Shown here in pieces: positions 7,079 to 61,292 of a stretch of DNA of 64,000 nt; within the stretch, counting starts at the first letter, position 1, and each line of letters starts with the position of its first letter. Source of the stretch: Ministeria vibrans ATCC 50519 (lineage: Eukaryota; Protista; Filasterea); the NCBI GenBank assembly GCA_943704425.1, contig CALSCP010000141.1:1-64000 (forward strand), given 5' to 3'. The position numbers were made by a program, and so were the translations under genes. The notes beneath the pieces were generated by a model. The model did no database searches, was not told where the DNA came from, and was given only the letters and a program-made list of their open reading frames with translations.

Positions 7079-8150
7079 CTATTCGCTATCGGACGACGGA
7101 GAGAGCGCATCCAAAGTTGCAAACTTGCGACGAAGAGCACGACTCATCATGGGCGTGAGTCCATCGCCGGTCATACTGCTGCGTTGGTGCTTGGAGCGGG
7201 AAGGCGTGCCACCGGGAGAGCGTGAGATGCCGCTGTGTTTGAGTTTGGCCGAGCGGATCTGGTCGAGACTGAACAGAGCCTGAGGGGTATCTGTGGAGCG
7301 TTTGTGGTGGTGGTGGTGGCTGCTGCGGTTGGGTGTTGTTGTTGCGGTGCGCTTTGTGCCTGTGGTGGTGGAAAACACAGCGGCAGGTGGGGGGGGTGGG
7401 GGTGGAGTGGGGATGGCAAGAGGAGTGGTGGTGGCGACGCGGAGAGGGCTCTCCGTGCGGTGTCCCGCCACTGTGTTTGTCAGGTGGTGATGCAACTGCT
7501 GGGCTCGCTCATACTCCTGTTTTTGGAAGCGCTGTTGGTCTGCGTGCCATTTTTCTTGCTGTTGTTGGTAGGTGGTTTGGTTGCGCTCGAGTTCGCGCAC
7601 ACGCTGTTCGAGGGTGTGCAGTCGTGTGTGCAGCGCCGCAACATCCTCGCTGCTTGTCGTTGTGGTTGTCTCGCCGCCTGCAGACTTTCCGTAGAAGAGT
7701 GACTGGATGGCCAGAGAGAAGTAATCGCCAAAGCGACTCTTCATCGACGTAAGAACTCCTGAAAAGATCAATTTGTGTTAGGATCGCTTTCTCTTCACGC
7801 AACTTGACAAAAGTTAACAATAGGCGACGATAAACTGATTGCAAGACACGAATGCGAAATACAATGTCGCTACGCATCAGAGGACGCATCCAAAGATTCA
7901 AATCTCACCGGTTCTTTTGCGCTGCACTGGAATCGCCACGGGCGTCGACGGATCGCCTTCCTCGCGCGTCAGACGACTTATTCTTGAAGACTCAATGGCA
8001 CTGCGCGCAAGAGGCGAGCGAGCCTGTACGATCTTACGGCGTTTTCCAGAGCGTAACACTCCTGATCATTATTTTTGAAAAATAGTATGAGTTCAATTTT
8101 GTAGTCTGTTTCAGTTCAAGTTTACGTGGGGAGGGCGAATGGTTAGGCAT
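7079..8150 (-). CDS. PRR11: Proline-rich protein 11 (PRR11)-like; 5' exons tentative
   Basis: Coiled coil, poly-Pro, then C-terminal RSPGGTP...TGDGLTPMMSRALRRKF, matching the recalled PRR11 signature (RSPGGTP...TGTGLTPVMTQALRRKF). Confidence 0.75.
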
Positions 8151-8509
8151 TAAGTGTTCGGTAATATGAAACGGGTGAACAAGAGAAACAGAGTGAGTTA
8201 GTCATTATTGAATATTGAGCAGTGAAAAGCGAAATATGATCGTTGGTAATGTCACGACTACGATTGATCTCTTCTCTCTCTCTTCACAAGACCTGTGCCT
8301 CTGCCACAGCCATGGCAACATTAAGTTTGCAAGTAATTGGCAGGTATGAGGGCAATTGGCGAGTCGAGACTGCGCTACAGCGGGAAAATCAAGATGAGAT
8401 CGTGTCAAGTATCAAAAGTGCAAAACGATTGAAAAGTGAAAATGAAACCGCTAATGAGTCAAAAAATTGTATACACTGCCTCGTGTGAAATTCTGTTTGT
8501 GCTATACTA

Positions 8510-8836
8510 ATGTCAAGTGCGGCCGCCCCCAAACCCTGCCGCTTCAGCTCGGCCTGTACGCGTGCCGACTGTCCGTATGCGCATCCCCCGGGCCACGTTG
8601 TGGACGGTGAGTCCCCTGCCTGCCCCACACCCCGCCCCACATGCCCACCCGACCCCCGACCCTCCCCGCCCCATCGTCTACCCCTCTGCAAACCGTTTTT
8701 CTCACTTGCATGCTCCTTTTTTTTTTATGTTTTGTGTGTGTCTCTCTCTCTCTCTGTTTCTCTTTTTCTGAAGCTAACGCTGCCAGCAAGGCCCCCAGAC
8801 CTCCCTGCCGCGATGGATTCCACTGCACTCGCATTG
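8510..8836 (+). CDS. Two exons encoding a Nab2-type CCCH zinc finger and the start of a second finger
   Basis: PCRFSSACTRADCPYAHP (C-x5-C-x4-C-x3-H), phase-1 intron, then PCRDGFHCTRI followed by a GTACGT donor. Confidence 0.65.
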
Positions 8837-34100: not shown

Positions 34101-34890
34101 GGCACAAGGTGGTCTTGATTGGACCGCTCTGTCCGTTGTCGACGTCGATGTGCCAATTAACATTTCGATTCCGCTCCTGTCGTGCGCCGACCAAGGCACC
34201 TACTTGTGCCAGTACTACAACGAGTCGTCGAACGAGTGGACGTACGAGTCGGTGGCGTCGCCTGCGCCCAGCACGCCTGGCAGTGTTGTGTGTCAGACGT
34301 CGCATCTGTCGTCGTTCCGCGGCTACCAACAGGCACCGTTACAGACGAGCCGCTCGAGCAGTGGTGGCACAGGCACCGTTGTGGTCGCTGTCATTGTGGC
34401 CATGGTTGGCATTGCTCTGCTCACCCTTATTATTTTGTTTGTGGCTCTGCGTCGCCAGCGTGCCAAGCGAGAGGAATTCAAGGTGGCTGCCCAGACAAGT
34501 CGCGGGTCGATGCACAGCAACGTGAGCAGCACCGGCTCGCTTGGACGCAAGTCGCGGCAGGCACGCGACATTACCCGCCGTCTGTCCGCGGTGGATGTGT
34601 TTGAAGGACCCGACGGCTCCAATGTCAACGAGATTGTCGACGTGCTCATGCAGGGAGACCACGACGACCTGGCCATGGCGGGCGTGACGCAGAGCAACCC
34701 GGCGCGCGGCTTCAACCGTTTCAGTACGCTCGACGACGTGGACACCTTTGAGAACCCGCTCTTCTCGTCGTACGACGATGCCAGCTCAATTGGCGGCGAC
34801 TCGGCCATTGAATACGCCGAGTATGGCGAGTACACGCGCCAGAGCAGCGCCAACTTCACAATGGGTCATACGGAGGATTCGAACATTTGA
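25195..34890 (+). CDS. Giant type I membrane protein: signal peptide, acidic pro-piece, poly-Arg segment, ~1500 aa of GCC2/GCC3-type Cys repeats, EGF, IPT-like, PKD/REJ-like, GAIN/GPS, one TM helix, Tyr-rich tail (intron 25452-25781)
   Basis: Repeats of CxxCPxGxY; EGF CDSNNGKGDCMQQCLELIGSYKCHCDNGY; REJ-like YTW motifs; GPS CQYYN..W..CQTSHLSSF; TM VVVAVIVAMVGIALLTLIILFVAL-RRQR. Confidence 0.88.
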   Translation: MHRKTLFLAVAAAVLAYAVAPAHSAAVAAAEDDLASSLADQIEIQQLPTLLQDAAVALSGQLPETDLTVQRRFLSSRRRSSRRRRRYELSLKTEEQKTIKTTLTKKKKNILLVFISTLMFXXXXXXXXXXXXXXXXXXXXXXXXXXXXXXFFFFFFALFVYIIRAQPNSHTPSRSMPVFNSRTFDPCVSPPVSPPRIFSISRRRSSRRRSSTRRRFFTTRRRFTIARRRRRFVSRRRFITRRRFISRRRRRRRVSTRRRVVSRRRVVTRRRAAQVCVPGQYRVGLSCGNCAAGRFTSSGTATTCTLCAAGRYSGPVASSCTFCAGGKYSGSGASVCLNCAAGKRSSGNTCVPCSSGTYSPAAGLASCTSCPTGRYAPSSSVGNSVCSQCQAGRAALASGSSSCSTLCGAGFYSAAGAAACSQCAQGSYSTGTQNAQCTNCPVGRYADLTGSVTCSPCAPGYINSAAGAQNQCNTPCAAGTFSAGGVSMCSSCAAGTYSASAASTCLTCTAGRFSFASASLCSTCDAGRFSLANQGDSCNQCGAGSYSAAGSSACTQCSAGSVTASPGSGSCAPCAPGKFQATPGMQICSTCPGGTYSLSGATTCITCGEGTVSLAGASACTTCAAGYQSGPPGSETCKPCEQGSTSVAQSSSCTPCPAGTAAPPNGVGLCMACVAGTYSASTGSTTCISCPLGTAMAIAGATTCHACTAGTYSGKLPAATVCQSCLAGSASSASASSCTVCPPGTSAPSTNSHMCSPCADGSYNFGSGNTACIQCPAAHFCNDGVIQTCPTGHYALAGVAECTACEPGYMCVNGTRQACPVGTYQGAAMATSCNFCPNGQYQPLTGHTECVACPLGNSCVDGVVTPCIASTYASAPGSSVCITCSSGTYTDQPGMSTCASCAKGNFCVNGISSPCVAGTYSHLNSAGASVCDVCPIGSQCPSGGVKLPCPTGTHQPLAGQTVCLTCTAGAVCQGGTAEVCPDGLHNPNTASTVCISCSVNHACTQGVMTPCPDGFYTPSTGASSCTPCPAGSYCVAGVGISPCAAGSFQAQTQQSVCETCSLGSACVNGVETLCAAGTYTNTTGASACETCFARHSCSNGIIHLCDEGLHQPAVGASTCVACPIGHYCTSGLSNPCPVGHSCNLGQLSQCQPGTFTETEGQTTCVDCPAAHYCANGNRILCEQGLYSANAGASVCSVCPVGSACVDGVATVCPAGQHQPSLGQWTCTSCPVSSSCNLGIATVCPDGSFTSKIGQSACLSCVAGNRCTNGATEPCPNGQYQNMTGASTCHSCNAGSRCVNGLELRCPEGTHQPLGGQTVCIDCAIGSFCTGGSSQVCPAGAYQSAPRMSSCDSCPIGFACNNGVESACLPGSHQPNVGSSVCLNCAVGHMCVGGANPQTVCAPGSYQPSAGASTCTTCPALHSCEGGATARVCGAGTYQDQTGQSVCKECAIGSYCIQAVSTLCPAGFYTDVVGQSVCSVCPVGSMCAQGIQTPCAPGQHQPSTQASVCIGCEARHYCVQGTQSICADGQYQPAEGASVCKSCEARYMCTQGVRTLCPNGYYQEASEQASCVACPDGYQCFNGTRTMCADGLFSDASTQFICSVCPAAHSCSSGIKAPCAVGLHQPASSQSSCLSCAVGSYCLGGVSTQCPEGLYTNGFGSTICSSCTPGSFCTAGLIEACPAGSYQAAGNATDCITCPVEHYCPAGAPNAIMCAPGFYQTQAGSSSCDSCNVGFACENGIQTQCGDVDMGGTYTNKTGEPQCLDCPIDGSVYCTNGLAYPCPGGYNCTNGLKEDIPECDSNNGKGDCMQQCLELIGSYKCHCDNGYYLVGNGTMPNGCVLSSQTAPPTNSNPATITSVTPLVGLLRTEMNITLSGTNFNNQPVIECFVEATGVHAGLLVGHSVAVDAPGSPADKRVCSMPYFSDVSQEVTLSFSGDGGHTFFTQPSNTDMVFTYWAPAPFPLVARFSDLGYTISVLFNSSAGPRTNDINKSQCSRYFSASTVAALGGSGATCTFPGNGKAPSNEMLITLASGATILPGDMITFAASNFGAGGVIEPGQAFAESTSASVEVLRPLNPTVPDIVLDGANTISACNNLELTVYPLGGTAGRPLTYTWHVTSSADNWGTYGTDVVELLASSDVTTGILIYNEYLESGANYTFDVVATNIFNVSSDALDTVSVLVSPDHVPSVTVVGDSASVQRDEELVFVGDLAISVCANQTKTSQVYTWSILPHAVLGSSRNSRTLAIMPGALNVSTTYELTLTVDIVDNINNILLSTGSDSTTISVVSALPEVIVRDGSHRLQSTSLPLLVEAACYDPNVAGGECSYTWSCMFTARDATSAAPCVGVDLSLNKTAVIEFEASSLALTDGGFYTFSVTASKADGRTSTPGAPGTSVTIEIVDDNQAAGITINPIGELFTKPIANSNERLLLVANTQLPPYLELLESEGEGEGEFIGDLGEGEGEGDVFMGDLDSDFFNAEGVVYPITWTMVKNAIPNFEQVLCSSATDSSLCVEANSLLPGVTYSFNASAARGWAVYEVSINGIPALAAKSAPLTATPVSPSVSKGNALETVYTISAGSWSSPTGGQLSYVFSVGPMIGGTRLSPQLPVGGNFKTVLPASVTEGTTRRRGEDGTIELFVTVIDRKTGAMSNGTVQVEILNPNVDDGGTADENDGPLSAFLNTTLASVVPATNVHEYLVVADSALDMIREVTFDGDTGSYTCPPQLSNTLGIILRGVRVCLAVSTHTTLETAHIVSVVRKISSRAKCLSEAQLVLARKLVDQGLLLWQLPRDVFRAEGGIVTSSDMNMLTMQSVVSVMASTLHVNTSMDLEADPLVGLSANDYDDGVEDAGRTTQNILEQVGHSAMRHSSESEGTITIASDNGAMAVTLGSFVATRQGVPLTVGGGSCPTEACYVNVTLDAQYFELPDLLNFVLMITHYAETPFSAGVGSDGERLGSVTGTCATTQFTDVTLLAQGGLDWTALSVVDVDVPINISIPLLSCADQGTYLCQYYNESSNEWTYESVASPAPSTPGSVVCQTSHLSSFRGYQQAPLQTSRSSSGGTGTVVVAVIVAMVGIALLTLIILFVALRRQRAKREEFKVAAQTSRGSMHSNVSSTGSLGRKSRQARDITRRLSAVDVFEGPDGSNVNEIVDVLMQGDHDDLAMAGVTQSNPARGFNRFSTLDDVDTFENPLFSSYDDASSIGGDSAIEYAEYGEYTRQSSANFTMGHTEDSNI

Positions 34891-35196
34891 GTTTTTACTA
34901 TTATTATTATTCTTATTATTACAACTGTCTTTTTTTATTTTGTTTTTTGAAGAAGAAGACGTACGTAATGTATAGTTAATAGTAGGTCGAAACAGGACTC
35001 AGGGGAGCAAAAACGATTGTTTTTTAATAATAAAAATTTATTATATTTTTTCAATTTTCATTCCTCACAAATCACATTTTTGATTTTTTCACAGATCACT
35101 ACCCATCTCTTGTCCATCCATACACAGCCGGGCACGCACACCGGACACCTCGAATATCCTCTTTCTTCTTCTTCTTCGTCCTTGGTCTTTTTTTGC

Positions 35197-35458
35197 ATGT
35201 CTGCGTCTCCTTCGTCTGTCAGAGTTCTGCGATTGTATCGAGAAATCCTGCGCGCAACTCGACCCGCCCCAGGCCAGGTGTCCGACCATCTGTACATCCG
35301 TCGCCAGGTACGCGCCGTCCGTCGTATGTGCGTGTTTGAGTCTGACAAAAGGTGACTTTTGCAGATTCGCGAAAATTTTGATAACCACGTCGACAAGACG
35401 GACAAAGACGAGATTAAGCAACTTATCAAGGTGAGTGAGTGCACCGACGCTAACCATA

Positions 35459-35495
<37 letters not shown>

Positions 35496-35556
35496 TTACG
35501 ACGGGCATGTGTAGATTGGAAAGCACTTTCTTCAAGTGTCGAAACACATTCTGTAA
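35197..35556 (+). CDS. LYR-motif (Complex1_LYR) mitochondrial microprotein, 72 aa; exons 35197-35307, 35365-35430, 35515-35556
   Basis: VLRLYREILRA...IRRQIRENF...TDKDEIKQLIKIGKHFL; two phase-0 GT-AG introns; missing from the ORF track as a whole protein because it is spliced. Confidence 0.85.
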
Positions 35557-37256
35557 TGGACCGGTGGCTTGCGTCGCAAGTGGTCGCACTTGGCGGCGCC
35601 TACGACCTTGATCTTGTGAGCTACGTGGTGTCTTTGTTTTCTGATGCTGGTGGGGATGACGACGATGACGACGACACGACGGAAATGGCCATTGAAATGC
35701 TCATGGGCCATCTGCCGCCCAGCACACCAGCCGCGTCGGTCGCACAGCTTGTTGATACCTGCCAACGCTACGTCCGGGACCCTGCGTTGATTCCAGAGGT
35801 TCCTCTTGAGGAAGAGAAGGGGCACGATGAGGATGAGGAGGAGGTAGGGCACAGCAACAATGACGACGACGACACCGGCGACGCAACTTGTGTCGCAGAT
35901 GACGATTTGGACGACCGTGACGGTGATGATGATGAGGTGGAGGATGGTAGCTCTGACAGTGAAGACGACACTGACGAGACGGGCGACAGGTTCGACTCGC
36001 CCGACATGGAGTTCCTCCTTGGCATGTTTCCATCGCTCTCACTGGAGGCACTGCACGACGCACTCGTTCGCTCACACGGAAACGTCACCGCCTGCACGGA
36101 CATTCTTCTTTTCAACACCAATACGAACGTGCCCGTCGCGCCAACGACCGCGGCGGGCACCCAGCCGGCCTGCAAGTACTATCTGGCGGGCGAGTGTCTG
36201 CGGGCCGACTGCATGTTCGCCCATGATCTTTCGCAGGTCGCGCCCTGCTCCTTCTTCCAGGCGGGTCTCTGCCTCAAGGGCGATGCCTGCCCCTTTGCCC
36301 ACTTTTACGCGGCACCAATTTCAACTGCAGCCACACCAGCGGTACCCCCTTCCGTCACTGCCCCTTCTCCTTCTCTCACCGAAGACCAATTTCCGTCACT
36401 TCCTTCGACCAAGGGCGCAGCGCCCTTCTCTGCCGCTGCGCCCTCTTCGCCTTCCCCTTCCTACTTGCGTGCCGCATCTCTCTCCAAGATCAGTGCTCTG
36501 CAACAAGCGTACCCATCCGTGCCCATTGCGTCGCTTGAGTCGATTCTGCTGCGCGAGTGTGGAGGTGTGCTCCAACAGGCTGAGAAGCGCATCGCAAACC
36601 TCTTTCCAGACGCAGTACGCTTCTGCACACGCACTGCATCCGACCGTCATGCCGAGACCGAGCGCGTCCGCCACGAGCTGCAAGAGAAGAGGGAACGCGA
36701 GCGGACCCGCGAAGGGCGTGTTGGGGGCACAACGGGAGTGCAGAGTGCTGCGCAAATTGCGCATCTGGTGGCGTGGGTGGACACGGGCGCATCTGTGCAC
36801 AAGTCGTACACGGAGATCCGGGCCGAGTCGAAGCGCACGGCCGAAGCGCGCAATCGATGTCTGCAGCTGGCGCGCGACTGCTATCTGGGCTCGCGTGGGG
36901 CTGCTGCGCGCGAGCACTCGCGCGCCGCACGAGAGCTGGACACGGAGATGCGTGCGCTCGAGGCGTGTGCGGCCGAGCAATTGTTTCGACAGCGCAATGC
37001 GACGTCGCCGGCAAATGTACTCGACCTGCATGGGCTGCACCGGCGCGAAGCCACGCACATCATCGATCTGCACCTGCCCTTGCTCGTATCCCGCTCGCTT
37101 CCCAATCTGCTTCTAATCTGCGGTACGGGACACCACTCACAAGGCGGCCATGCCCGCCTGCGCCCCGCCTGCCGCGCTCATGTCGCTGCACAGGGTTTTA
37201 ATGTCGTCGAGACCTCGCGCGACGGTCGTGGCGGCCTCCTCCTCGTTACCCTTTGA
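35556..37256 (+). CDS. CUE-like + 2x CCCH zinc finger + PAM2-like + DUF1771/Smr domain protein (Cue2/N4BP2/NONU-1-related endonuclease family)
   Basis: FLLGMFPSLS (CUE-like); CKYYLAGECLRADCMFAH and CSFFQAGLCLKGDACPFAH; EDQFPSL; Smr LDLHGLH...ICGTGHHS. Confidence 0.88.
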   Translation: MDRWLASQVVALGGAYDLDLVSYVVSLFSDAGGDDDDDDDTTEMAIEMLMGHLPPSTPAASVAQLVDTCQRYVRDPALIPEVPLEEEKGHDEDEEEVGHSNNDDDDTGDATCVADDDLDDRDGDDDEVEDGSSDSEDDTDETGDRFDSPDMEFLLGMFPSLSLEALHDALVRSHGNVTACTDILLFNTNTNVPVAPTTAAGTQPACKYYLAGECLRADCMFAHDLSQVAPCSFFQAGLCLKGDACPFAHFYAAPISTAATPAVPPSVTAPSPSLTEDQFPSLPSTKGAAPFSAAAPSSPSPSYLRAASLSKISALQQAYPSVPIASLESILLRECGGVLQQAEKRIANLFPDAVRFCTRTASDRHAETERVRHELQEKRERERTREGRVGGTTGVQSAAQIAHLVAWVDTGASVHKSYTEIRAESKRTAEARNRCLQLARDCYLGSRGAAAREHSRAARELDTEMRALEACAAEQLFRQRNATSPANVLDLHGLHRREATHIIDLHLPLLVSRSLPNLLLICGTGHHSQGGHARLRPACRAHVAAQGFNVVETSRDGRGGLLLVTL

Positions 37257-37296
37257 TCACCAACGATGATGACTCCCCATCTCCCTCCACACTACA

Positions 37297-37297
<1 letters not shown>

Positions 37298-37359
<62 letters not shown>
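37298..37359. repeat. (CA)n microsatellite between convergent genes
   Basis: Pure CA run. Confidence 0.95.
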
Positions 37360-37362
<3 letters not shown>

Positions 37363-37410
37363 CCTACATTTTTATCTTGTACTTTTTTTTGTTTGTAATG
37401 TATTTCTTAT

Positions 37411-54078: not shown

Positions 54079-57000
54079 ATGGGAAAACCTCCAAAGGCCC
54101 CGCCCACCAAACCCAAATCGAGCCGCAAAAACGGAACCGATGAAAACACTGACGCATCGCTCGACATCCGGATCCCTGCCGTCGGCGACCGTGTCTGGGT
54201 CGTTGATCCTACGGATGCGTACAAAATTGCAACGGCGCGCTCGGTCACTCTGTCCTCAGGCGAGTGTATGGTCGAAGTAAGTGTCCGTTGCCATTTCTCT
54301 GCCCTACGCATAATCGCCCGCTCCAACGACTCTCAGCCCCTTTCCTGCTTGCCATCTCACTTGCCCTCATCTTTACACCGGTCCTTGCTGGTCTTTCTTT
54401 CATGAAATGGATGAAACCGAAGACAAACCGCCGCGAAACAATTACCGCTGCTTTGTTCACCCCTCTCATCGCCCCCACGTGCAGGTTGTCGACGACAAGT
54501 ACAAGACGAGCGTGGTGGCGGCGTCTGCCACGAGCCCCGTCAATCCGTCGTCCCAGGACGGCGCCATGGACTCGACGCAGCTCATGTACCTGCATGATCC
54601 GTCGCTGCTGCACAATGTTCGCGTCCGCTACGCACAACAGGACATCCATACCTACACTGCGCACATTCTTGTCGTCATCAATCCTTACCAGCGCCTCAGC
54701 ATCTACGACGCGGTCACCATGCACCGTTACGAAGGCCGTCCCATCGGTGCGCTTCCCCCTCACGTCTTTGCTATGGCAGATCGCGCCTACCGCCAAATGA
54801 AATCTCAACATTGCGATCAGTCGGTCGTCGTCAGCGGCGAGTCGGGTGCAGGCAAAACCGAAACATGCAAGCTTGTCATGCGTTACTTCTCGTTCGTGGG
54901 CCGAGGTGACGCCGACTCGGATGCCTCCGCCTCCATGCGGGATATTGAGACCAAAGTCATGCAGGTACGCTATACTCTCGCACCCTCTTTCCCCGAATAA
55001 TTGTTTTTTGTTTGTGTGCAAGGTGAACCCTGTTCTGGAGGCGTTTGGCAACGCAAAGACGCTGCGCAACAACAACTCGTCGCGCTTTGGCAAGTTCACC
55101 GAGATGCGCTTTGATGGTGCCGCCAAGCTGGTAGGTGCCTCGGTCGAGACGTATCTTCTGGAGAAACCGCGTGTGGTGGCGCCGGCCGAAGGCGAGCGTA
55201 CCTTTCATGTCTTCTATCAGCTGGTGGCGGGTGCGTCGGCTGCAGACCGCGGGCGATGGCACCTCGACAATAACGCGACCGCAAGCGACTTTGATGTGCT
55301 CGCACGCGGACACTGCACTTCCATTGGCGGTGTCGACGATGCCGCGGATTTTACCGAGATGCGTACAGCCCTGGGCACCGTGGGCTTTGCACCGGAAGAG
55401 TGTGCTAGTGTCTTTGACGTAATTGCTGCTCTGTTGCATCTGGGAAATGTGTCTTTTGAAGGCACGGCTGCTCGCTCCGCGACGCCCTCAAGCCGTCTGA
55501 GCGACGTGGGTCGCAATGCCGCAGCGCACGTGAGTGTTCTTCTGGGCATCCGCGAGTCATTGTTGTGCGAGCGACTCACATTACGCATCATCAATGCGGG
55601 TGGACCCAAGGCACGCACACAGGGAAGCCGTAGTGGCGCTGGTGACACTATGAAGATTCCACTGTCACCCTTGGACGCCGAGTTTGCACGCGATGCTCTG
55701 GCTAAGTACATATATGCCCGTCTCGTCTTTCCCTGGCTCGTCCACCGCATCAACTCCTGTCTGCCCCGCGACGACGCCGTCTCGGCCGCCCTCATCGGCA
55801 TCCTTGACATTGCCGGCTTTGAGGTGTTCGAGCGCAATGGCTTTGAACAGCTTTGCATTAACCATGCCAACGAACAGATCCAACAGTACTTTAACCGGCA
55901 GATTTTGCTGCAGGAACAGGATATTTACGAACTCGAAGGGTTACGCTACCGTCGCGTCGAATTTCACGACAACACCACTACCATCGATTTGCTCGAGGAG
56001 CGATCGCAGGGCATTCTGGCGCTGCTCGACGAAGAATGCGTCATGCCCAAGGCAACCGACAAAACCTTCACTAACAAGGTCTGTCTTCGTTTTTCATATT
56101 TCGCGTTTCTAATTTTTTTTCTCTTTTTTTTTGTTCCTACACGCACACACGCTCTCTCTGTCACTTTGCTTGTTTCTCCCTTTTCTCACTTTGTTTGTTT
56201 CTCCCTCCTCTCACCTTGTTTGTTTCTCCCACCTTTCACTTTGTTTGTTTCTTCCTTCTCTCCCTTTGTTTCTCCCTTTTCTCACTTTGTTTGTGTCTCT
56301 CTCCCTCCTCTCTCTTTTCTCTCTTCTGTCTTCCTCCCTATCTTGGTTGCTTTCTTTGGTCGTTAGGTGCACACAATACATCGAGGCTCACCGAGTCTCG
56401 GCCGACCAGATCGCACGTGCCCCTTGAAGGAAGACGATGCGTTTGTGGTGCGCCACTTTGCAGGAGACGTTATGTACGCCACGGCCGGCTTCCTCGACAA
56501 GAACAACGACGCCCTTCACGACAGTCTTCAGGAAGTGCTCACCACAACCGAAAGCGACTTTGTGCGAGTCTTGCTTGATCTCGATGCGAGCGACAGCCAA
56601 GTGGGCGGCGGCCGCTCCCCCTCCAAGTCTGGCCGTGTCAAGTCGGTTGCCCGTCGTTTCCGCACTCAACTTGCCTCGCTCCTTACGCGCCTCAACAGCG
56701 CCCCGTCCACATTCATTCGTTGCATCAAGCCGAACATGCAGCAGGTGCCGCGCATCTTTGACGGGCCCATGGTCATGAACCAGCTGCGTTGCAGTGGCAT
56801 GTGTGCCGCCGTGCGTCTGATGCAGGCGGGCTTCCCAACGCGCTGTCCCTTCGATTCGCTCTTCAGTCGCTACGCCCCGAAAATGCCCTATGCCATTGCC
56901 AATCTAAAGCCAGCTCTGTTTTGTGAGGCGCTTCTTGTTGCACTCGACCTCAGTCCCAAAGACTTTCAGATTGGTCTTACCAAGGTATTCTTTCGACCGG

Positions 57001-60000
57001 GCAAAATGGCCGTGCTCGAGGAGCTCCTCTCGACCGACTCAGAAGAGAAAATCCAGTCTGTTGTGGCCCGTGTCAAACGCTGGCTTGCCCGTCGTCGCTT
57101 TCGCAGCGCCATACACTCTGTGCTTGCCTTTGAGCGCATGCGTCGTCGCCTCGTCGGCATTCGTGCCCTCAAGAAGCTCCAGCGTGCCGTACGCATTGTC
57201 GTTCGCATGCGCCCCTGGTTCCGCATCCTTCGTCGCTCGCGGGCCCGTCTCATGGAACGCCGTCGCGCCGAACAACTTGAAGCGGAGCGCGAGGCCGATC
57301 GGAAGCGGGCCGAGGAGGAGGCAGCGCGTGAATTGGAGGCCCGTCAGAAGCGTGAACTCGAAGAGAAACTCGAGCGCGACCATCGTTTGGCGGAGCTTCG
57401 TCGTCAGCAGGAGGAGGAGCACTCAAAGCGCGCCGAGTACGAGAAGGAGCTGCAGGCGACGCGCAAGGCCGTGTCGGCTTTTGATGGCGAGCGACTCACG
57501 TGGCAGACGGAACGTGAGGGATTGTTGGCGCGGGTCGACGAGGCGGTCGCCCAGGTAGCCACTGCCGCCCAGAACAAGGCGGCGCTCGAGTCACAGCTAG
57601 GCGAACTCCAGAGTGCCAAGGATCAGCTGCAACAGGAGACTACTGCGGCCCAGGCGGCGCGCACGGCTCTTGAGTTGCGTGTGCGCACCATGGAAGAACA
57701 GCGCGAGAGCGAGCTGACACAACGCAGCGAGGACACTTCCGAGATGCAGCGTGCTCTTGACGACGCTATTACGTCACGTCAAGAGCTCGAGTTGCGTCTG
57801 CAAGATGCAGAACAGCGTCTTGGTGCTCAGACGCGCTTGGTCGAGGAAGGGCGTGCGACGATTGCGAGCGAGCGAGAGGAACGCAGTGCCGTCGAGCGGC
57901 TGCTCAAGGTGAGTGAAACAGAGAGAGTTGCTCTGGTGAGTTCGCACGAGGCCGAGTGTGTTGCACACACCCAGCAGCTGGAGATGGTCACTCAGGCGCG
58001 TGTCCGCCTTGAGGGTCGTGCCGAGGAACTCGGCGAACAACTGCGTGAATTGCGCCAAGAGCAGCAAAGCATGCGCGAAGAGTTAGCGGCCGCCAAGTCA
58101 AGTGCGAGCACCGCAACGGAACGCGTGAGCACCCTTGAAGCGCAACGCGCCGAGGAGCAGCGTATGCATCAGATGGAGGCGTCGTCGGTCGACCGTGAGC
58201 TTGGCGTTGCGCTGGCCACTCGCCAAGAACTCGATCTGAAACTTCAGTCGGCACAGCACGAGGCGCACAGAGCACAGGAGACGCTCTCGGCGGTGCGCAC
58301 AGAGCTCGCGTCCGAACACAGTTTGCGGGACGCCAACGATCAGCGTGTTCGCGAACTCGAGTCTCAGCTTGAGTCGATGCGCGGCGAACACCAGCTTGCA
58401 TTGTCGTCGCTGTCACAGCAACTGGGCGTGGCGACCGGCTCGAGCCAGGTCTTGCGAAGTCGCATTGAGGAACTGGAGCGCACTTTGGCAGCCCAAGTCT
58501 CGACACACGACGCACTCACGACCGAAGCAAGTACGCTGCGTGCGCGCTGTGCTCTTCTCGAGAGTCGCAGTGAAACGCTCGAGCGGCAGCGTGCCGAGGC
58601 CCAGACACTCCGCGAGGGCACCGGGACACGTCTGCAAGCGCAGTTGCGTGAGAGCACCAAGCACCGTCTGCGTCTCGATGGGTTGTTGCAGGCGGCGCAT
58701 GCAGCGCATCGCCGTGATGTTGCGCTGCTTGGCCTCCTTCGCTGGCGCGTACAAGTCAAACTAATTGCATTCAATCGTTTACAGGCGGAGAATCATGAGC
58801 AGACGGCTGCATTGATGGCGCGCGTGCACACGTCGGAGGATTTGGCGCGCGAGAAGAGCGCCGCTCACGAGCAGCTGCGTCTCGAGATGGTGGGACTCGA
58901 GCGTCTCAATGCCATCAACATGGAGGCGAGCACACGCGAGGCCGACTGGCAGTTGCAGTCGATGCGGCGCGAGGCGGACGCCATCGCACAGGAGCTCGAT
59001 TTGGAACGGGAACGGTACGCGACGCTTGAAGAGAAGGTGTCGATGCTGGAGCGGGCGCGTCGTGTGCTGCAGTGGCAACAGAGTGCCGAGCGCGCACGCC
59101 TGCAGCGTTCCGAGCAAGAGTGGCGTCAGCGCTGGGAAAACGAGCAGGCGACCGCCATGGCGGCTCTGCAAGAGCGCGACGAGTTGCGACAGCGCGTCGC
59201 AGTTCTTACCGCTGCCATGCCCAAGCGCCGCCGTGAACGCTCACACCAGTCCAAGGGAGGCATGATGGTCCAAGGCACGGGCATTGTTGGACTCGACGAC
59301 GGCGACGACGACCACGGCAACAGCGAAGCAGTGCCGGCGGCCGTTGTAGTCGAACGTGATCAGCTGCGTGCGCGCGTGGCGCGTCTTGAGCAGGAAGCCG
59401 GCACGGCCGAGTCGGAGCGGAACAAGCTTGAGGAGGATGTGGCGCACAACGAGGAGGTGCTCGAGGAACTGCATCGAATGCTACAGCTTGCTGTGGAAGA
59501 GGCGCGACAGCTTCGTGAAAGTGCGGCTGCTGCTGCTGCTGGTGGCAGTGCTGGTGCCGGGGGTCTCCTAGTGGACGCTGCAGGGGGTGGCAGTCGGACG
59601 CAGCGATTGAGCGTGACTGCACCCGGCCAATGCGACGCGTGTAGCTCGTCGCGACGTCCTTTGCACGAGGCGAGTGTACATGGCCACGGCGCCTGCGTTG
59701 TGGCGGCCATCAAGGGATTGCAGTCGTCAAAGGGCGCCACGATGTTGCTGGGGGAGCAAATGGACGAACTCGACGACAACAATGCGACAGCGATTCACGT
59801 TGCGGCCAGCGCCGGCTCCGAAGAGTGTCTGCGTCTGCTGGTGGAGGCGGGAGCGAACCTGGAGCGTCGCGACGACATGAAACGCACAGCGTTGCATCGG
59901 GCCGCCATGAAGGGACACACCAAGGTGGTGGAGCAGCTTGTGCGCATGCGCGTGGCGCTTGACAAGATAGACGAGCGCGGCAAGACGCCCCTTGACATTG

Positions 60001-61292
60001 CAGCCGCTCTTGGACATGTGGACGCAGCGGCAGCTCTTGCCCGTGCCGGGGCCAAACTGGCTGGCGGCAACGGCACACGCGGCTCACCCATGCACGTTGC
60101 GGCCGAAAGGGGCGATGTTGCCATGCTTGAGGCACTGATTCGTGCGGGCGCGAGTGTGAACGATGCGGACGTCAACGGTCGCTCGCCCGTCTACGTGGCG
60201 GCGTCGTACGGCCAAACGGACGCGCTCAAGGTGTTGCTTGAGCACGACGCGACACCCGATGCGCTCGTCGAAGGTGGTCACGCGCCACTGTACGCGGCGG
60301 CCAGTGACGGCCGCACAGGCGTCATGAAGCTGCTGCTTGAGGGCGGTGCCGATCCCAATGCCCACTATGAGGTTGACGGCTGGAACGTGCTGCACAAGTG
60401 CGCGAGTGCGGGCCTTGCCGACTGTGTACGTCTACTGGCCGCGTCGGCGCACGTCAACGCAACGACCAATGACGGTTCGCACATGACTGCGTTGCACATG
60501 GCGGTGCGCGGCCAACACGAGGCGGTAGTCGACTCGCTGCTTGGATGTGGCGCCGAGCCCGATGTGCGTGACAACAACGATCGCACGCCCTTGCACCATG
60601 CGATTCTCATGGGTCATACGGGACTGGTGCGCACCCTGCTGGACAACGATGCGTCGGTGCTGTTGAGGACCAAAGACGGCACAACCACCATGGACATGGC
60701 CGACGACTGTGGTGTGGACGAAATTGTCGAACTCATCGAGACGGCGACGCAGGAGCAGCGCGAATTGCAAAACGAGCTGGACAGCGGTATCAGTGAGGAA
60801 GAGGCGGGTCAGCCGACAAGCGAGTCTGCCATGGACGCGGACGCCCCGTTGGCCACGTCGATTTCATCGGGAACAACAACATCAACAGCAGTGCCCATGC
60901 TCCGGGGCTCGCATCGGCGACGACGACAGTCGATTACGCACACGGGTGCAGGCGTTGGCGCAGCGGCGGGTGGGTCTCGCCGAGAGCGACGAGGATCTGT
61001 CTTCCGTGCTCCAACGACAGTCACACTGCGATTGCACGGACAGACTATAGGCGGAGTGCGTGTGCGCGTGGAGGACACTGTTAACGAGATGCTCACCAAT
61101 GCTTCTATTGCCCTCAAGACACCCGGCGTAAGCGAGAAACACAAACAAACAAAAATTCTATATTTTCGTCTTTTAATTTTCTCTTCTTTCATTTCGCATC
61201 AGGTGACCTACTCAATGCTGGTCGATGAAAGTGGTGTGGCCGTGGACGACACGTCTCTATTGGAACGAGGAGAAATTATCTATGCAACTTAG
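54079..61292 (+). CDS. Myosin VI-like motor with long coiled coil, ankyrin repeats and C-terminal KHA-like domain; 5 exons
   Basis: LMYLHDPSLLHNVRVRY, GESGAGKTE, NNNSSRFGKF, ILDIAGFE, QLRCSGM..LMQAGFPTR..FCEALL..GLTKVFFRPGK (myosin VI-type); multiple TPLH/TALH-type ankyrin repeats. Confidence 0.88.

What the first reader, a model, noticed from the sequence alone, without database searches (positions are those of the whole stretch)
35197..37256. Probable bicistronic mRNA: LYR-motif microprotein stop overlaps the Smr endonuclease start (TAATG)
Seen in sequence: the spliced 72-aa LYR ORF ends at TAA 35554-35556, and the last A of that stop is the A of the ATG (35556) opening the CUE/CCCH/Smr ORF, so there is no intergenic spacer for a promoter or poly(A) site. 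ORF1's AUG context is weak (-3 T, +4 T) and ORF2's is strong (-3 G, +4 G). The spliced ORF1 contains no other AUG in any frame, while the AUGs in the region lie in the introns. Established: this pattern is the leaky-scanning signature; human MIEF1 also carries an upstream LYR microprotein ORF; Smr proteins of the Cue2/NONU-1 type cut mRNA at collided ribosomes. Inference: a mitochondrial LYR factor is co-expressed with a ribosome quality-control nuclease whose level could depend on scanning or reinitiation.
Basis: partly seen in the sequence, partly recalled or inferred. Interest (0 to 1): 0.82.

Follow-up and report, generated by a model that had tools for sequence, protein, structure and literature searches.

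The report
Candidate two-protein mRNA: LYR plus Smr
A small mitochondrial-type LYR protein gene ends on the very base where a ribosome-rescue-type Smr nuclease gene begins. The two are probably read from one messenger RNA, an arrangement already shown in green algae and humans, but only sequence features support it here.

Summary
A three-exon, 72-codon LYR ORF (35197-35556) ends in a TAA whose last A is the A of the ATG opening a 566-codon ORF (35556-37256). That ORF carries CUE, two CCCH fingers, DUF1771 and Smr domains. Homologues in Pythium and Mortierella align from residue 4, so ATG 35556 is the real start.

Features favouring one transcript read by leaky scanning:
- The spliced ORF1 has no other ATG (3.2 expected; 6.5% of coding windows of that size in this genome are ATG-free). 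The three local ATGs lie in the introns.
- No AT-rich 3'-end signature follows the LYR stop.
- ORF1 has T at -3 and ORF2 has G.

Weak points:
- There is no RNA evidence.
- This genome's start consensus is faint. Only -3 purine and -1 C stand out, +4 G does not, and a position matrix does not separate the two starts.
- No LYR ORF was found upstream of 23 distant Smr homologue loci.

Green-algal work (PMC7896298, PMC11291117) already describes LYR proteins on bicistronic mRNAs, ATG depletion before ORF2 and overlapping stop/start codons. This organism appears to be a non-photosynthetic protist without close database relatives.

Verdict: a plausible new member of a known kind. I put a bicistronic mRNA at about 0.55 overall. 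The main rival is two overlapping but separate transcripts.

The parts
34891..35196 (+). Intergenic region between the upstream giant receptor gene (stop at 34890) and the LYR start. It has an AT-rich block (34891 to about 35100, 26-28% GC) followed by a C/T-rich leader. It is the only promoter-like stretch upstream of either ORF.
   Evidence: GC profile. The lowest 60-nt GC here is 0.13. There is a single ATG at 34968, and the last 226 nt are ATG-free (2.8 expected, P about 0.04).
35197..35307 (+). ORF1 exon 1 (37 codons), carrying the L-Y-R motif. The start context is -3 T, -1 C, +4 T.
   Evidence: Pfam Complex1_LYR positions 2-21(32), E = 2.8e-4. Translation.
35308..35364 (+). Intron 1, 57 nt, GTACGC...TTTTGCAG, phase 0. 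It contains ATG 35326.
   Evidence: The acceptor resembles the likely intron acceptor CTTTGCAG that ends 8 nt before ATG 56472 in the same window.
35365..35430 (+). ORF1 exon 2 (22 codons), the middle of the LYR domain with the conserved Phe.
   Evidence: Pfam Complex1_LYR positions 30-51, E = 1.1e-3, colinear with exon 1.
35431..35514 (+). Intron 2, 84 nt, GTGAGT...TGTGTAG, phase 0. It holds (GT)16 at 35463-35494 and ATGs at 35458 and 35507. ATG 35507 opens a 34-codon out-of-frame ORF that runs across the Smr start.
35515..35556 (+). ORF1 exon 3 (13 codons plus TAA).
35554..35558 (+). TAATG: the ORF1 stop and the ORF2 start share one base (35556).
35556..37256 (+). ORF2, 566 codons with no intron. 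It has an N-terminal conserved motif (residues 1-35), an acidic tract, CUE (36000-36116), two CCCH fingers (36168-36302), DUF1771 (36807-36998) and Smr (37020-37253). The Smr domain carries D-L-H at 37023-37031 and G-T-G-H-H-S at 37122-37139.
   Evidence: Pfam. The alignment with eight homologues shows the N-terminal motif shared with Pythium P0001 and Mortierella P0013, and invariant DLHGLH. The region matches the solved N4BP2 Smr domain 2vkc at E = 4e-10. The first 50 codons have coding-type GC1/2/3 of 0.68/0.34/0.64.
37257..37410 (.). Shared 3' region with the convergent SGNH-type gene: a (CA)n run followed by a T-rich stretch. This is the first typical 3'-end signature downstream of the LYR stop.
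   Evidence: The lowest 60-nt GC is 0.23. T-rich words are enriched after stops in this genome.

Best explanation
One RNA polymerase II transcript probably starts in the AT-rich region at about 34900-35190 and ends after 37256. After two small introns are removed it carries both ORFs.

Most scanning 43S complexes would start at the first AUG (35197) and make a 72-aa LYR-motif protein. This is presumably a mitochondrial acyl-ACP-dependent assembly factor of undetermined subfamily. A fraction would pass that AUG, whose -3 base is a pyrimidine, meet no other AUG in 216 nt, and start at AUG 35556. That would make a CUE/CCCH/DUF1771/Smr protein of the Cue2/N4BP2 kind, presumably an RNA endonuclease recruited to ubiquitinated stalled ribosomes.

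Because stop and start share a base, some ribosomes finishing ORF1 may also reinitiate. The amount of Smr protein would then depend on start-codon stringency and on correct splicing of intron 2. Retention of that intron adds an out-of-frame AUG at 35507.

Shown: the anatomy, the domain content, the true ORF2 start, the ATG depletion and the lack of an intergenic signature. Inferred: the single transcript, translation of both ORFs, the route to ORF2 and both protein functions.
For: - The stop/start overlap leaves no spacer.
- ATG 35556 is the genuine ORF2 start. The N-terminal motif aligns with homologues from residue 4, there is no other in-frame ATG upstream, and the coding GC pattern begins at the ATG.
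- There is no ATG in the 216 nt of spliced ORF1 (3.2 expected; 6.5% of coding windows are ATG-free; shuffle P about 0.04). All three local ATGs are intronic.
- The 226 nt before ORF1 are also ATG-free.
- After 28 of 39 long-ORF stops in this genome, a 60-nt window of at most 35% GC occurs within 200 nt. After the LYR stop the minimum is 48%, which is coding-like.
- ORF1 has -3 T, seen in 15% of sampled starts, and ORF2 has -3 G.
- ORF1 is 219 nt, shorter than the median ORF1 of curated algal bicistrons (291-357 nt). Some Auxenochlorella loci also have overlapping stop/start codons, and leaky scanning was shown there in vivo (PMC11291117).
- LYR-motif proteins are recurrent on algal bicistronic mRNAs (PMC7896298).
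- No canonical in-frame acceptor could fuse LYR to Smr.
- No family hits exist on the other strand or in other frames.
- ORF2 has no intron, so an ORF1 stop would not lie upstream of an exon junction. This last point is inference.
Against: - No transcript, TSS, poly(A) or translation data could be reached.
- ATG depletion is only modestly significant. About a third of it is explained once the protein simply lacks internal Met (codon shuffle P = 0.31).
- The start consensus of this genome is weak, and a position matrix does not separate the two starts.
- The exon 2 region dips to 38% GC, the low tail of coding sequence, so an internal promoter is not excluded.
- The genome is compact, with spacers of 150-300 nt, so overlapping transcripts are plausible.
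- No LYR-like ORF lies upstream of Smr homologues in Pythium, four ENA or TARA loci, or 19 metagenome loci. These are all distant, at most about 40% identical, and were screened only with a motif pattern.
Confidence: 0.45

Rival explanations
1. Two overlapping but separate transcription units. The Smr mRNA would start at its own TSS inside the LYR gene, either at 35329-35430 with intron 2 spliced out or at 35510-35555, giving an AUG-free leader. The LYR mRNA would be polyadenylated inside the first part of the Smr ORF. The shared base would then be a by-product of genome compaction.
For: The genome is very compact: 307 nt separate the upstream gene from LYR, and 155 nt separate the convergent stops. 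The exon 2 region is relatively AT-rich, with a minimum of 38% GC. A T-rich patch at 35628-35646 resembles words enriched after stops. The arrangement is absent from other Smr loci. The start-context argument is weak.
Against: There is no intergenic-type AT-rich block between the ORFs, although most gene ends sampled have one. Exon 1 is also ATG-free, which this model does not need. The T-rich patch encodes part of the conserved N-terminal motif.
Confidence: 0.28
2. The same single bicistronic mRNA, but ORF2 is reached mainly by termination-reinitiation at the UAAUG overlap, as in influenza B BM2, caliciviruses and some mycoviruses, rather than by leaky scanning.
For: The stop and start share a base in the pentanucleotide form known from those viruses (the viral precedent is general knowledge). 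ORF1 is short at 72 codons.
Against: No UGGGA (TURBS motif 1) occurs anywhere in the spliced ORF1. Reinitiation does not require ATG depletion, which is observed. Seventy-two codons is long for factor-retention reinitiation without a tethering element (general knowledge).
Confidence: 0.1
3. An operon-like primary transcript resolved by alternative processing. The intron 2 acceptor (35513-35514) or the CTTTCTTCAAG site (35526-35536) would receive a spliced leader or an alternative first exon. That would give a monocistronic Smr mRNA with a 20-41 nt AUG-free leader.
For: Acceptor-like motifs lie within 80 nt upstream of 19 of 39 long-ORF first ATGs, against 27% of background windows. An earlier unverified note (s1-764105) raised the same idea.
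Against: Many of those ATGs are probably in internal exons behind ordinary introns, for example 39224 and 56472. Genes alternate between strands in the window, which is unlike classical polycistronic arrays.
Confidence: 0.06
4. The LYR ORF is not a functional gene (a decaying or chance ORF in the Smr 5' leader), and only Smr is made.
For: The exon-level Pfam scores are each below the cut-off. The subfamily could not be assigned.
Against: Two exons match consecutive parts of the LYR profile and sum to 35.9 bits against a cut-off of 24.8. Both introns are canonical and phase 0, the frame is intact, and GC1/2/3 of 0.58/0.33/0.56 is coding-like.
Confidence: 0.04

Closest known systems
Green-algal bicistronic nuclear mRNAs translated by leaky scanning (Gallaher et al. 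2021, PMC7896298; Duenas et al. 2024, PMC11291117)
   Same: A short ORF1, here 219 nt against medians of 291-357 nt. ORF1 is often a small mitochondrial protein, and LYR-motif proteins occur on five bicistronic loci in those algae. The spacer is tiny or absent, with some overlapping stop/start codons in Auxenochlorella. ATG is depleted before ORF2 and the ORF1 start is sub-optimal.
   Different: This organism is not a green alga as far as can be told. It has no LHC genes, and the best named myosin matches are Capsaspora and Fonticula at 51% identity or less. An Smr ORF2 partner is not mentioned in the main text of Gallaher et al.. There is no transcript or in vivo evidence here.
Human MIEF1 mRNA with its upstream LYR microprotein (MIEF1-MP / L0R8F8)
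   Same: A roughly 70-aa LYR-motif protein is encoded upstream of a larger unrelated protein on one mRNA. This rests on general knowledge and was not checked here.
   Different: The downstream partner differs. Orthology of the two LYR proteins was not tested, because the joined ORF1 protein was not searched, by rule.
Cue2 (yeast), NONU-1 (C. elegans) and N4BP2 (human) Smr endonucleases of no-go decay
   Same: A CUE ubiquitin-binding domain plus a C-terminal Smr domain with the D-x-H motif that is needed for Cue2 cleavage (PMC6598757). The closest solved structure is the N4BP2 Smr domain.
   Different: There is one clear CUE domain instead of two; a second stretch scores only 11.5 bits. Two CCCH fingers and an N-terminal motif are added. 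There is no P-loop kinase domain of the N4BP2/NONU-1 type. The architecture matches the 'CCCH zinc finger and SMR domain-containing' proteins of fungi and oomycetes.
Viral UAAUG termination-reinitiation (influenza B M1/BM2, caliciviruses, hypoviruses)
   Same: The same overlapping stop-start pentanucleotide.
   Different: No TURBS-like UGGGA lies upstream. This is a cellular, spliced gene.

Membership tests
Leaky-scanning bicistronic nuclear mRNA (green-algal type) | Both ORFs on one capped, polyadenylated transcript | not testable with these tools
   No RNA data were reachable.
Leaky-scanning bicistronic nuclear mRNA (green-algal type) | Short ORF1 and very short inter-ORF distance | tested here: met
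   ORF1 is 219 nt spliced and overlaps ORF2 by 1 nt.
Leaky-scanning bicistronic nuclear mRNA (green-algal type) | ATG depletion upstream of ORF2 | tested here: met
   0 observed against 3.2 expected. 6.5% of coding windows are ATG-free and the shuffle P is about 0.04. The leader is also ATG-free.
Leaky-scanning bicistronic nuclear mRNA (green-algal type) | Weak start context at ORF1 relative to the genome's consensus | tested here: inconclusive
   -3 T occurs in 15% of 39 sampled starts, but -1 C is the preferred base, and the matrix score of 0.38 is above the median. The sample is small and noisy.
Leaky-scanning bicistronic nuclear mRNA (green-algal type) | Arrangement conserved in related species | tested here: inconclusive
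   It was not found at 23 Smr homologue loci, but all are distant (at most about 40% identity) and were screened by motif only. No close relatives exist in the databases.
Complex1_LYR / LYRM proteins | Match to the LYR profile, including the L-Y-R tripeptide and the downstream Phe | tested here: met
   Exon 1 matches profile positions 2-32 and exon 2 positions 30-51. Together they score 35.9 bits against a cut-off of 24.8. LYR and the Phe of ENF are read.
Complex1_LYR / LYRM proteins | Assignment to a named subfamily (ISD11, LYRM7, MIEF1-MP and so on) | tested here: inconclusive
   Exon-wise searches of solved structures and the protein atlas gave nothing usable. The joined protein was not searched, by rule.
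Cue2/N4BP2-type Smr endonuclease | Smr domain with the D-x-H motif | tested here: met
   Pfam Smr scores 22.3 bits, just under the cut-off of 25.7, but the region matches the N4BP2 Smr structure at E = 4e-10. DLHGLH is invariant in the alignment. The motif's role is described in PMC6598757.
Cue2/N4BP2-type Smr endonuclease | Ubiquitin-binding CUE domain(s) | tested here: met
   CUE scores 31.3 bits against a cut-off of 21.1 at residues 149-187. A possible second copy scores only 11.5 bits.
Cue2/N4BP2-type Smr endonuclease | mRNA cleavage at collided ribosomes | not testable with these tools
   This needs a biochemical or genetic assay.
N4BP2/NONU-1 subtype | P-loop polynucleotide kinase domain | tested here: not met
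   No kinase family appears among the Pfam hits.
TURBS-dependent termination-reinitiation | UGGGA motif upstream of the stop-start site | tested here: not met
   No TGGGA occurs in the spliced ORF1.

The most novel reading that the evidence does not exclude
LYR microproteins are repeatedly captured as the first cistron of leaky-scanning mRNAs in unrelated eukaryotic supergroups: animals (MIEF1), green algae, and this heterotrophic protist. If so, start-codon stringency, which responds to energy and stress state, sets the ratio of a mitochondrial assembly factor to a second protein. Here that second protein would be a ribosome-collision nuclease, so the translation apparatus would tune its own quality-control enzyme through scanning fidelity.
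Probability: 0.15. Interest if true: 0.65.

Novelty: new member of a known kind. Interest (0 to 1): 0.42.

Why it matters
If confirmed, this would extend nuclear bicistronic mRNAs with an LYR first cistron beyond green algae and animals, to a protist lineage that has no close sequenced relatives. It would also give a natural case in which the level of a no-go-decay-type nuclease depends on leaky scanning. For annotation, it warns that the 72-aa spliced gene is easy to miss, and that the Smr gene has no 5' UTR or promoter of its own in the usual sense.

Tried and rejected
- **Exact-product look-up of ORF2:** nothing on record.
- **Word searches with ORF2, whole and C-terminal region:** only distant homologues at 28-39% identity.
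- **Two metagenome scans:** no close relative. The second gave 19 distant loci, none with an LYR-like ORF upstream. One attempt failed for lack of conserved columns.
- **Context of the Pythium, TARA and ENA homologues:** the neighbours are FKBP, ribosomal L18A and JmjC genes, not LYR. One Logan contig had no DNA.
- **LYR subfamily by exon-wise searches:** blank or spurious, hitting designed proteins.
- **Other LYR loci of this genome (six found):** none shows an obvious second cistron.
- **Scan of 252 kb for small unspliced ORFs ending at long-ORF starts:** 28 hits, mostly exon or noise pairs, so not informative.
- **TGTAA as a green-algal poly(A) signal:** not enriched, 8 of 39. The TGTAA at the LYR stop is therefore not read as a signal.
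- **Fusion by alternative splicing:** rejected for lack of an in-frame acceptor.
- **Coding on the opposite strand or in other frames:** no family hits.
- **A second candidate bicistron noted earlier (SMIM12-like/GGPS1):** located and examined, but the overlapping ATG is out of phase with the next GGPS1 exon and an assembly gap intervenes. It does not count as support.
- **Left out by rule:** the joined 72-aa ORF1 protein was translated only inside a script, to check the frame and count ATGs. It was not sent to any search or fold tool.
- The contig is not human.
Full report
**What is there**

- An ATG at 35197 opens exon 1 (to 35307).
- A 57-nt GT..AG intron follows, then exon 2 (35365-35430), an 84-nt GT..AG intron holding (GT)16, and exon 3 (35515-35556).
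- Both introns are phase 0 and the product is 72 aa.
- Its TAA (35554-35556) shares its last base with ATG 35556, which opens an uninterrupted 566-codon ORF ending at 37256.
- The locus is single-copy in a 29.7-Mb, 2860-contig assembly.

**Are both ORFs real genes?**

ORF1:
- Exon 1 matches Complex1_LYR profile positions 2-32 and exon 2 matches positions 30-51. These are two independent hits in the right order.
- The genome-wide family scan gives 35.9 bits for the two together, against a cut-off of 24.8.
- GC by codon position is coding-like.

ORF2:
- It carries CUE (31.3 bits), two CCCH fingers, DUF1771 (44.4 bits) and Smr. Smr scores 22.3 bits, just under the Pfam cut-off.
- Its C-terminal part matches the solved N4BP2 Smr domain at E = 4e-10.
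- In an alignment with eight homologues the DLHGLH and TG-G-HS motifs are conserved. The D-x-H pair is the one needed for Cue2 cleavage (PMC6598757).
- The opposite strand and the other frames have no family hits.

**Is ATG 35556 the true start of ORF2?**

Yes, as far as sequence can tell.
- The first 35 residues form a motif (W..LG....Y...L.D, then an acidic run) that aligns with the N-termini of the Pythium oligandrum and Mortierella alpina homologues. In Mortierella the motif also starts at residue 4.
- No other in-frame ATG lies between the upstream stop and this one.
- The coding GC pattern (0.68/0.34/0.64) begins at the ATG.

So the zero-length spacer is not an artefact of picking the wrong start.

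**Signature of a single, leaky-scanned mRNA**

I assembled 252 kb of this genome, from the window plus three other contigs, and took 39 long ORFs with a coding GC pattern as a reference set.

*ATG depletion*
- Long ORFs hold 0.0147 ATG per nt, so ORF1 should hold 3.2. It holds none.
- 6.5% of 218-nt coding windows are ATG-free, and a shuffle of ORF1 gives P about 0.04.
- Part of this comes from the protein having no internal Met. With codons kept, 31% of shuffles have no out-of-frame ATG.
- The three ATGs of the locus lie in the 141 nt of introns (Fisher p = 0.06).
- The 226 nt before ORF1 are also ATG-free (2.8 expected).

*Gene-end signature*
- Intergenic DNA in this genome is AT- and T-rich.
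- 28 of 39 long-ORF stops are followed within 200 nt by a 60-nt window of at most 35% GC. The remaining stops are probably followed by introns.
- After the LYR stop the minimum is 48%, like coding sequence.
- Before the Smr start the minimum is 38%, in exon 2, which is the low tail of coding sequence. The region upstream of LYR reaches 13%, and the region downstream of Smr reaches 23%.

*Start context*
- In the 39 starts, -3 is a purine in 69% and T in 15%. Position -1 is C in 44%, and +4 G is not preferred.
- ORF1 has T at -3 but the preferred C at -1. ORF2 has G at -3.
- A small position matrix does not separate them, scoring 0.38 and 1.05, both above the median.

**Alternatives examined**

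*Fusion by alternative splicing.* This is unlikely. The only in-frame AG sites are inside the intron 2 donor, or 190 nt into ORF2 where the conserved N-terminus would be lost.

*Termination-reinitiation.* The UAAUG form suggests it, but no UGGGA element is present, and reinitiation would not explain the ATG depletion.

*A separate Smr promoter inside the LYR gene.* This cannot be excluded.
- A TSS at 35329-35430 with intron 2 spliced out, or at 35510-35555, would also give an AUG-free leader.
- The genome is compact enough for overlapping units. Spacers are 307 nt between the upstream gene and LYR, and 155 nt between the convergent stops.

*A spliced-leader or alternative-first-exon route.* This is a minor possibility.
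- Acceptor-like motifs are commoner upstream of long-ORF first ATGs (19 of 39) than in background windows (27%).
- Many of those ATGs clearly sit behind ordinary introns.

*Intron 2 retention.* It would place ATG 35507 and a 34-codon overlapping ORF in front of the Smr start. Splicing of that intron would therefore matter for Smr output under any scanning model.

**Comparative evidence**

- ORF2 has only distant relatives in the databases: Pythium at 28%, and chytrids, Mortierellomycota and a green alga at 32-40%.
- No close relative turned up in the metagenome collection.
- At the Pythium locus the upstream neighbour is a divergent FKBP gene. At two marine and ENA loci the neighbours are ribosomal L18A and JmjC genes.
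- None of these, nor 19 further metagenome loci, has an LYR-like ORF upstream, by a motif screen.
- The pairing is therefore lineage-specific or at least not ancient. This agrees with the algal finding that a functional relationship between partners does not hold for most bicistronic genes.
- The other five LYR loci of this genome show no obvious second cistron.

**Organism**

- No chlorophyll a/b-binding genes were found.
- A myosin from the window finds Capsaspora, Fonticula and assorted protist transcriptomes at 51% identity or less.
- I read it as a heterotrophic protist without close sequenced relatives, and not a green alga. It is not human.

**What is already known**

- Gallaher et al. 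[quoted passage not shown]
- Duenas et al. 2024 (PMC11291117) report short ORF1s, weak ORF1 start contexts, ATG depletion before ORF2, and overlapping stop/start codons at some Auxenochlorella loci. They also show by in vivo mutation that ORF2 is reached by leaky scanning.
- A 2025 preprint on Cryptosporidium (PMC11761812) reports polycistronic mRNAs there, and its abstract lists kinetoplastids, green and red algae and certain fungi as earlier cases.

The kind is therefore known. What would be new is the lineage and the Smr partner.

**Limits**

- The joined ORF1 protein was not sent to any search or fold tool, by rule. Exon-wise searches did not resolve the LYR subfamily.
- The genome sample could not be enlarged, so the start-codon statistics rest on 39 noisy starts.
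- A second candidate bicistron noted earlier in this genome (SMIM12-like/GGPS1) was located. Its overlapping ATG is out of phase with the next GGPS1 exon and an assembly gap intervenes, so it is not counted as support.

**Verdict**

I put a single bicistronic mRNA at about 0.55: 0.45 with leaky scanning as the main route and 0.10 with reinitiation. Separate overlapping transcripts stand at about 0.28. This is a new member of a known kind, of moderate interest.

Noticed in passing
L055:439-1660 (G000:C322, about 7607-8828): A two-exon SMIM12-like microprotein ORF (ATG 439, donor near 571, acceptor near 989) ends in a TGA (1176-1178) that overlaps an ATG (1175). The next clear GGPS1 exon (from about 1501) is in phase 0. 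With the only nearby donor (1229/1230) it falls in the frame of the microprotein, not that of ATG 1175. A run of N (1277-1286) lies in the intron. Whether this is a bicistron, a read-through or an assembly problem is open.
   Followed up: partly
252-kb sample: window, L012-L030: Polypyrimidine-AG acceptor-like motifs lie within 80 nt upstream of the first ATG of 19 of 39 long ORFs, against 27% of background windows. Several directly abut AT-rich DNA. Many are probably ordinary introns, but 5'-UTR introns or trans-splicing are not excluded.
   Followed up: partly
window 35507-35611: ATG 35507, inside intron 2, opens a 34-codon ORF that crosses the Smr start out of frame. Retention of intron 2 should therefore lower Smr translation.
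   Followed up: no
window 35556-35660: The first 35 or so residues of the Smr protein form a motif shared with the N-termini of Pythium and Mortierella homologues. No Pfam family covers it.
   Followed up: partly
window 36483-36554: There is a possible second, degenerate CUE-like stretch between the CCCH fingers and DUF1771 (11.5 bits, E = 0.25).
   Followed up: partly
window 35463-35494 and 37297-37360: A (GT)16 run lies in LYR intron 2 and a long (CA)n run in the Smr 3' region. (ATT)n and (TAA)n runs are common in intergenic DNA of this genome.
   Followed up: no
window 54921-61292: A myosin gene appears as two long ORFs in the same frame, separated by about 100 nt that include a stop codon. 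This is probably an intron ending at CTTTGCAG, 8 nt before ATG 56472. The best matches are myosin-VI-like proteins with PH domains from diverse protists.
   Followed up: partly
L003, L004, L005, L006, L008: Five further LYR-family loci exist in the genome. By eye, and from memory of the families, they look like SDHAF3, NDUFB9 and NDUFA6 types plus two unassigned ones. None is obviously bicistronic.
   Followed up: partly
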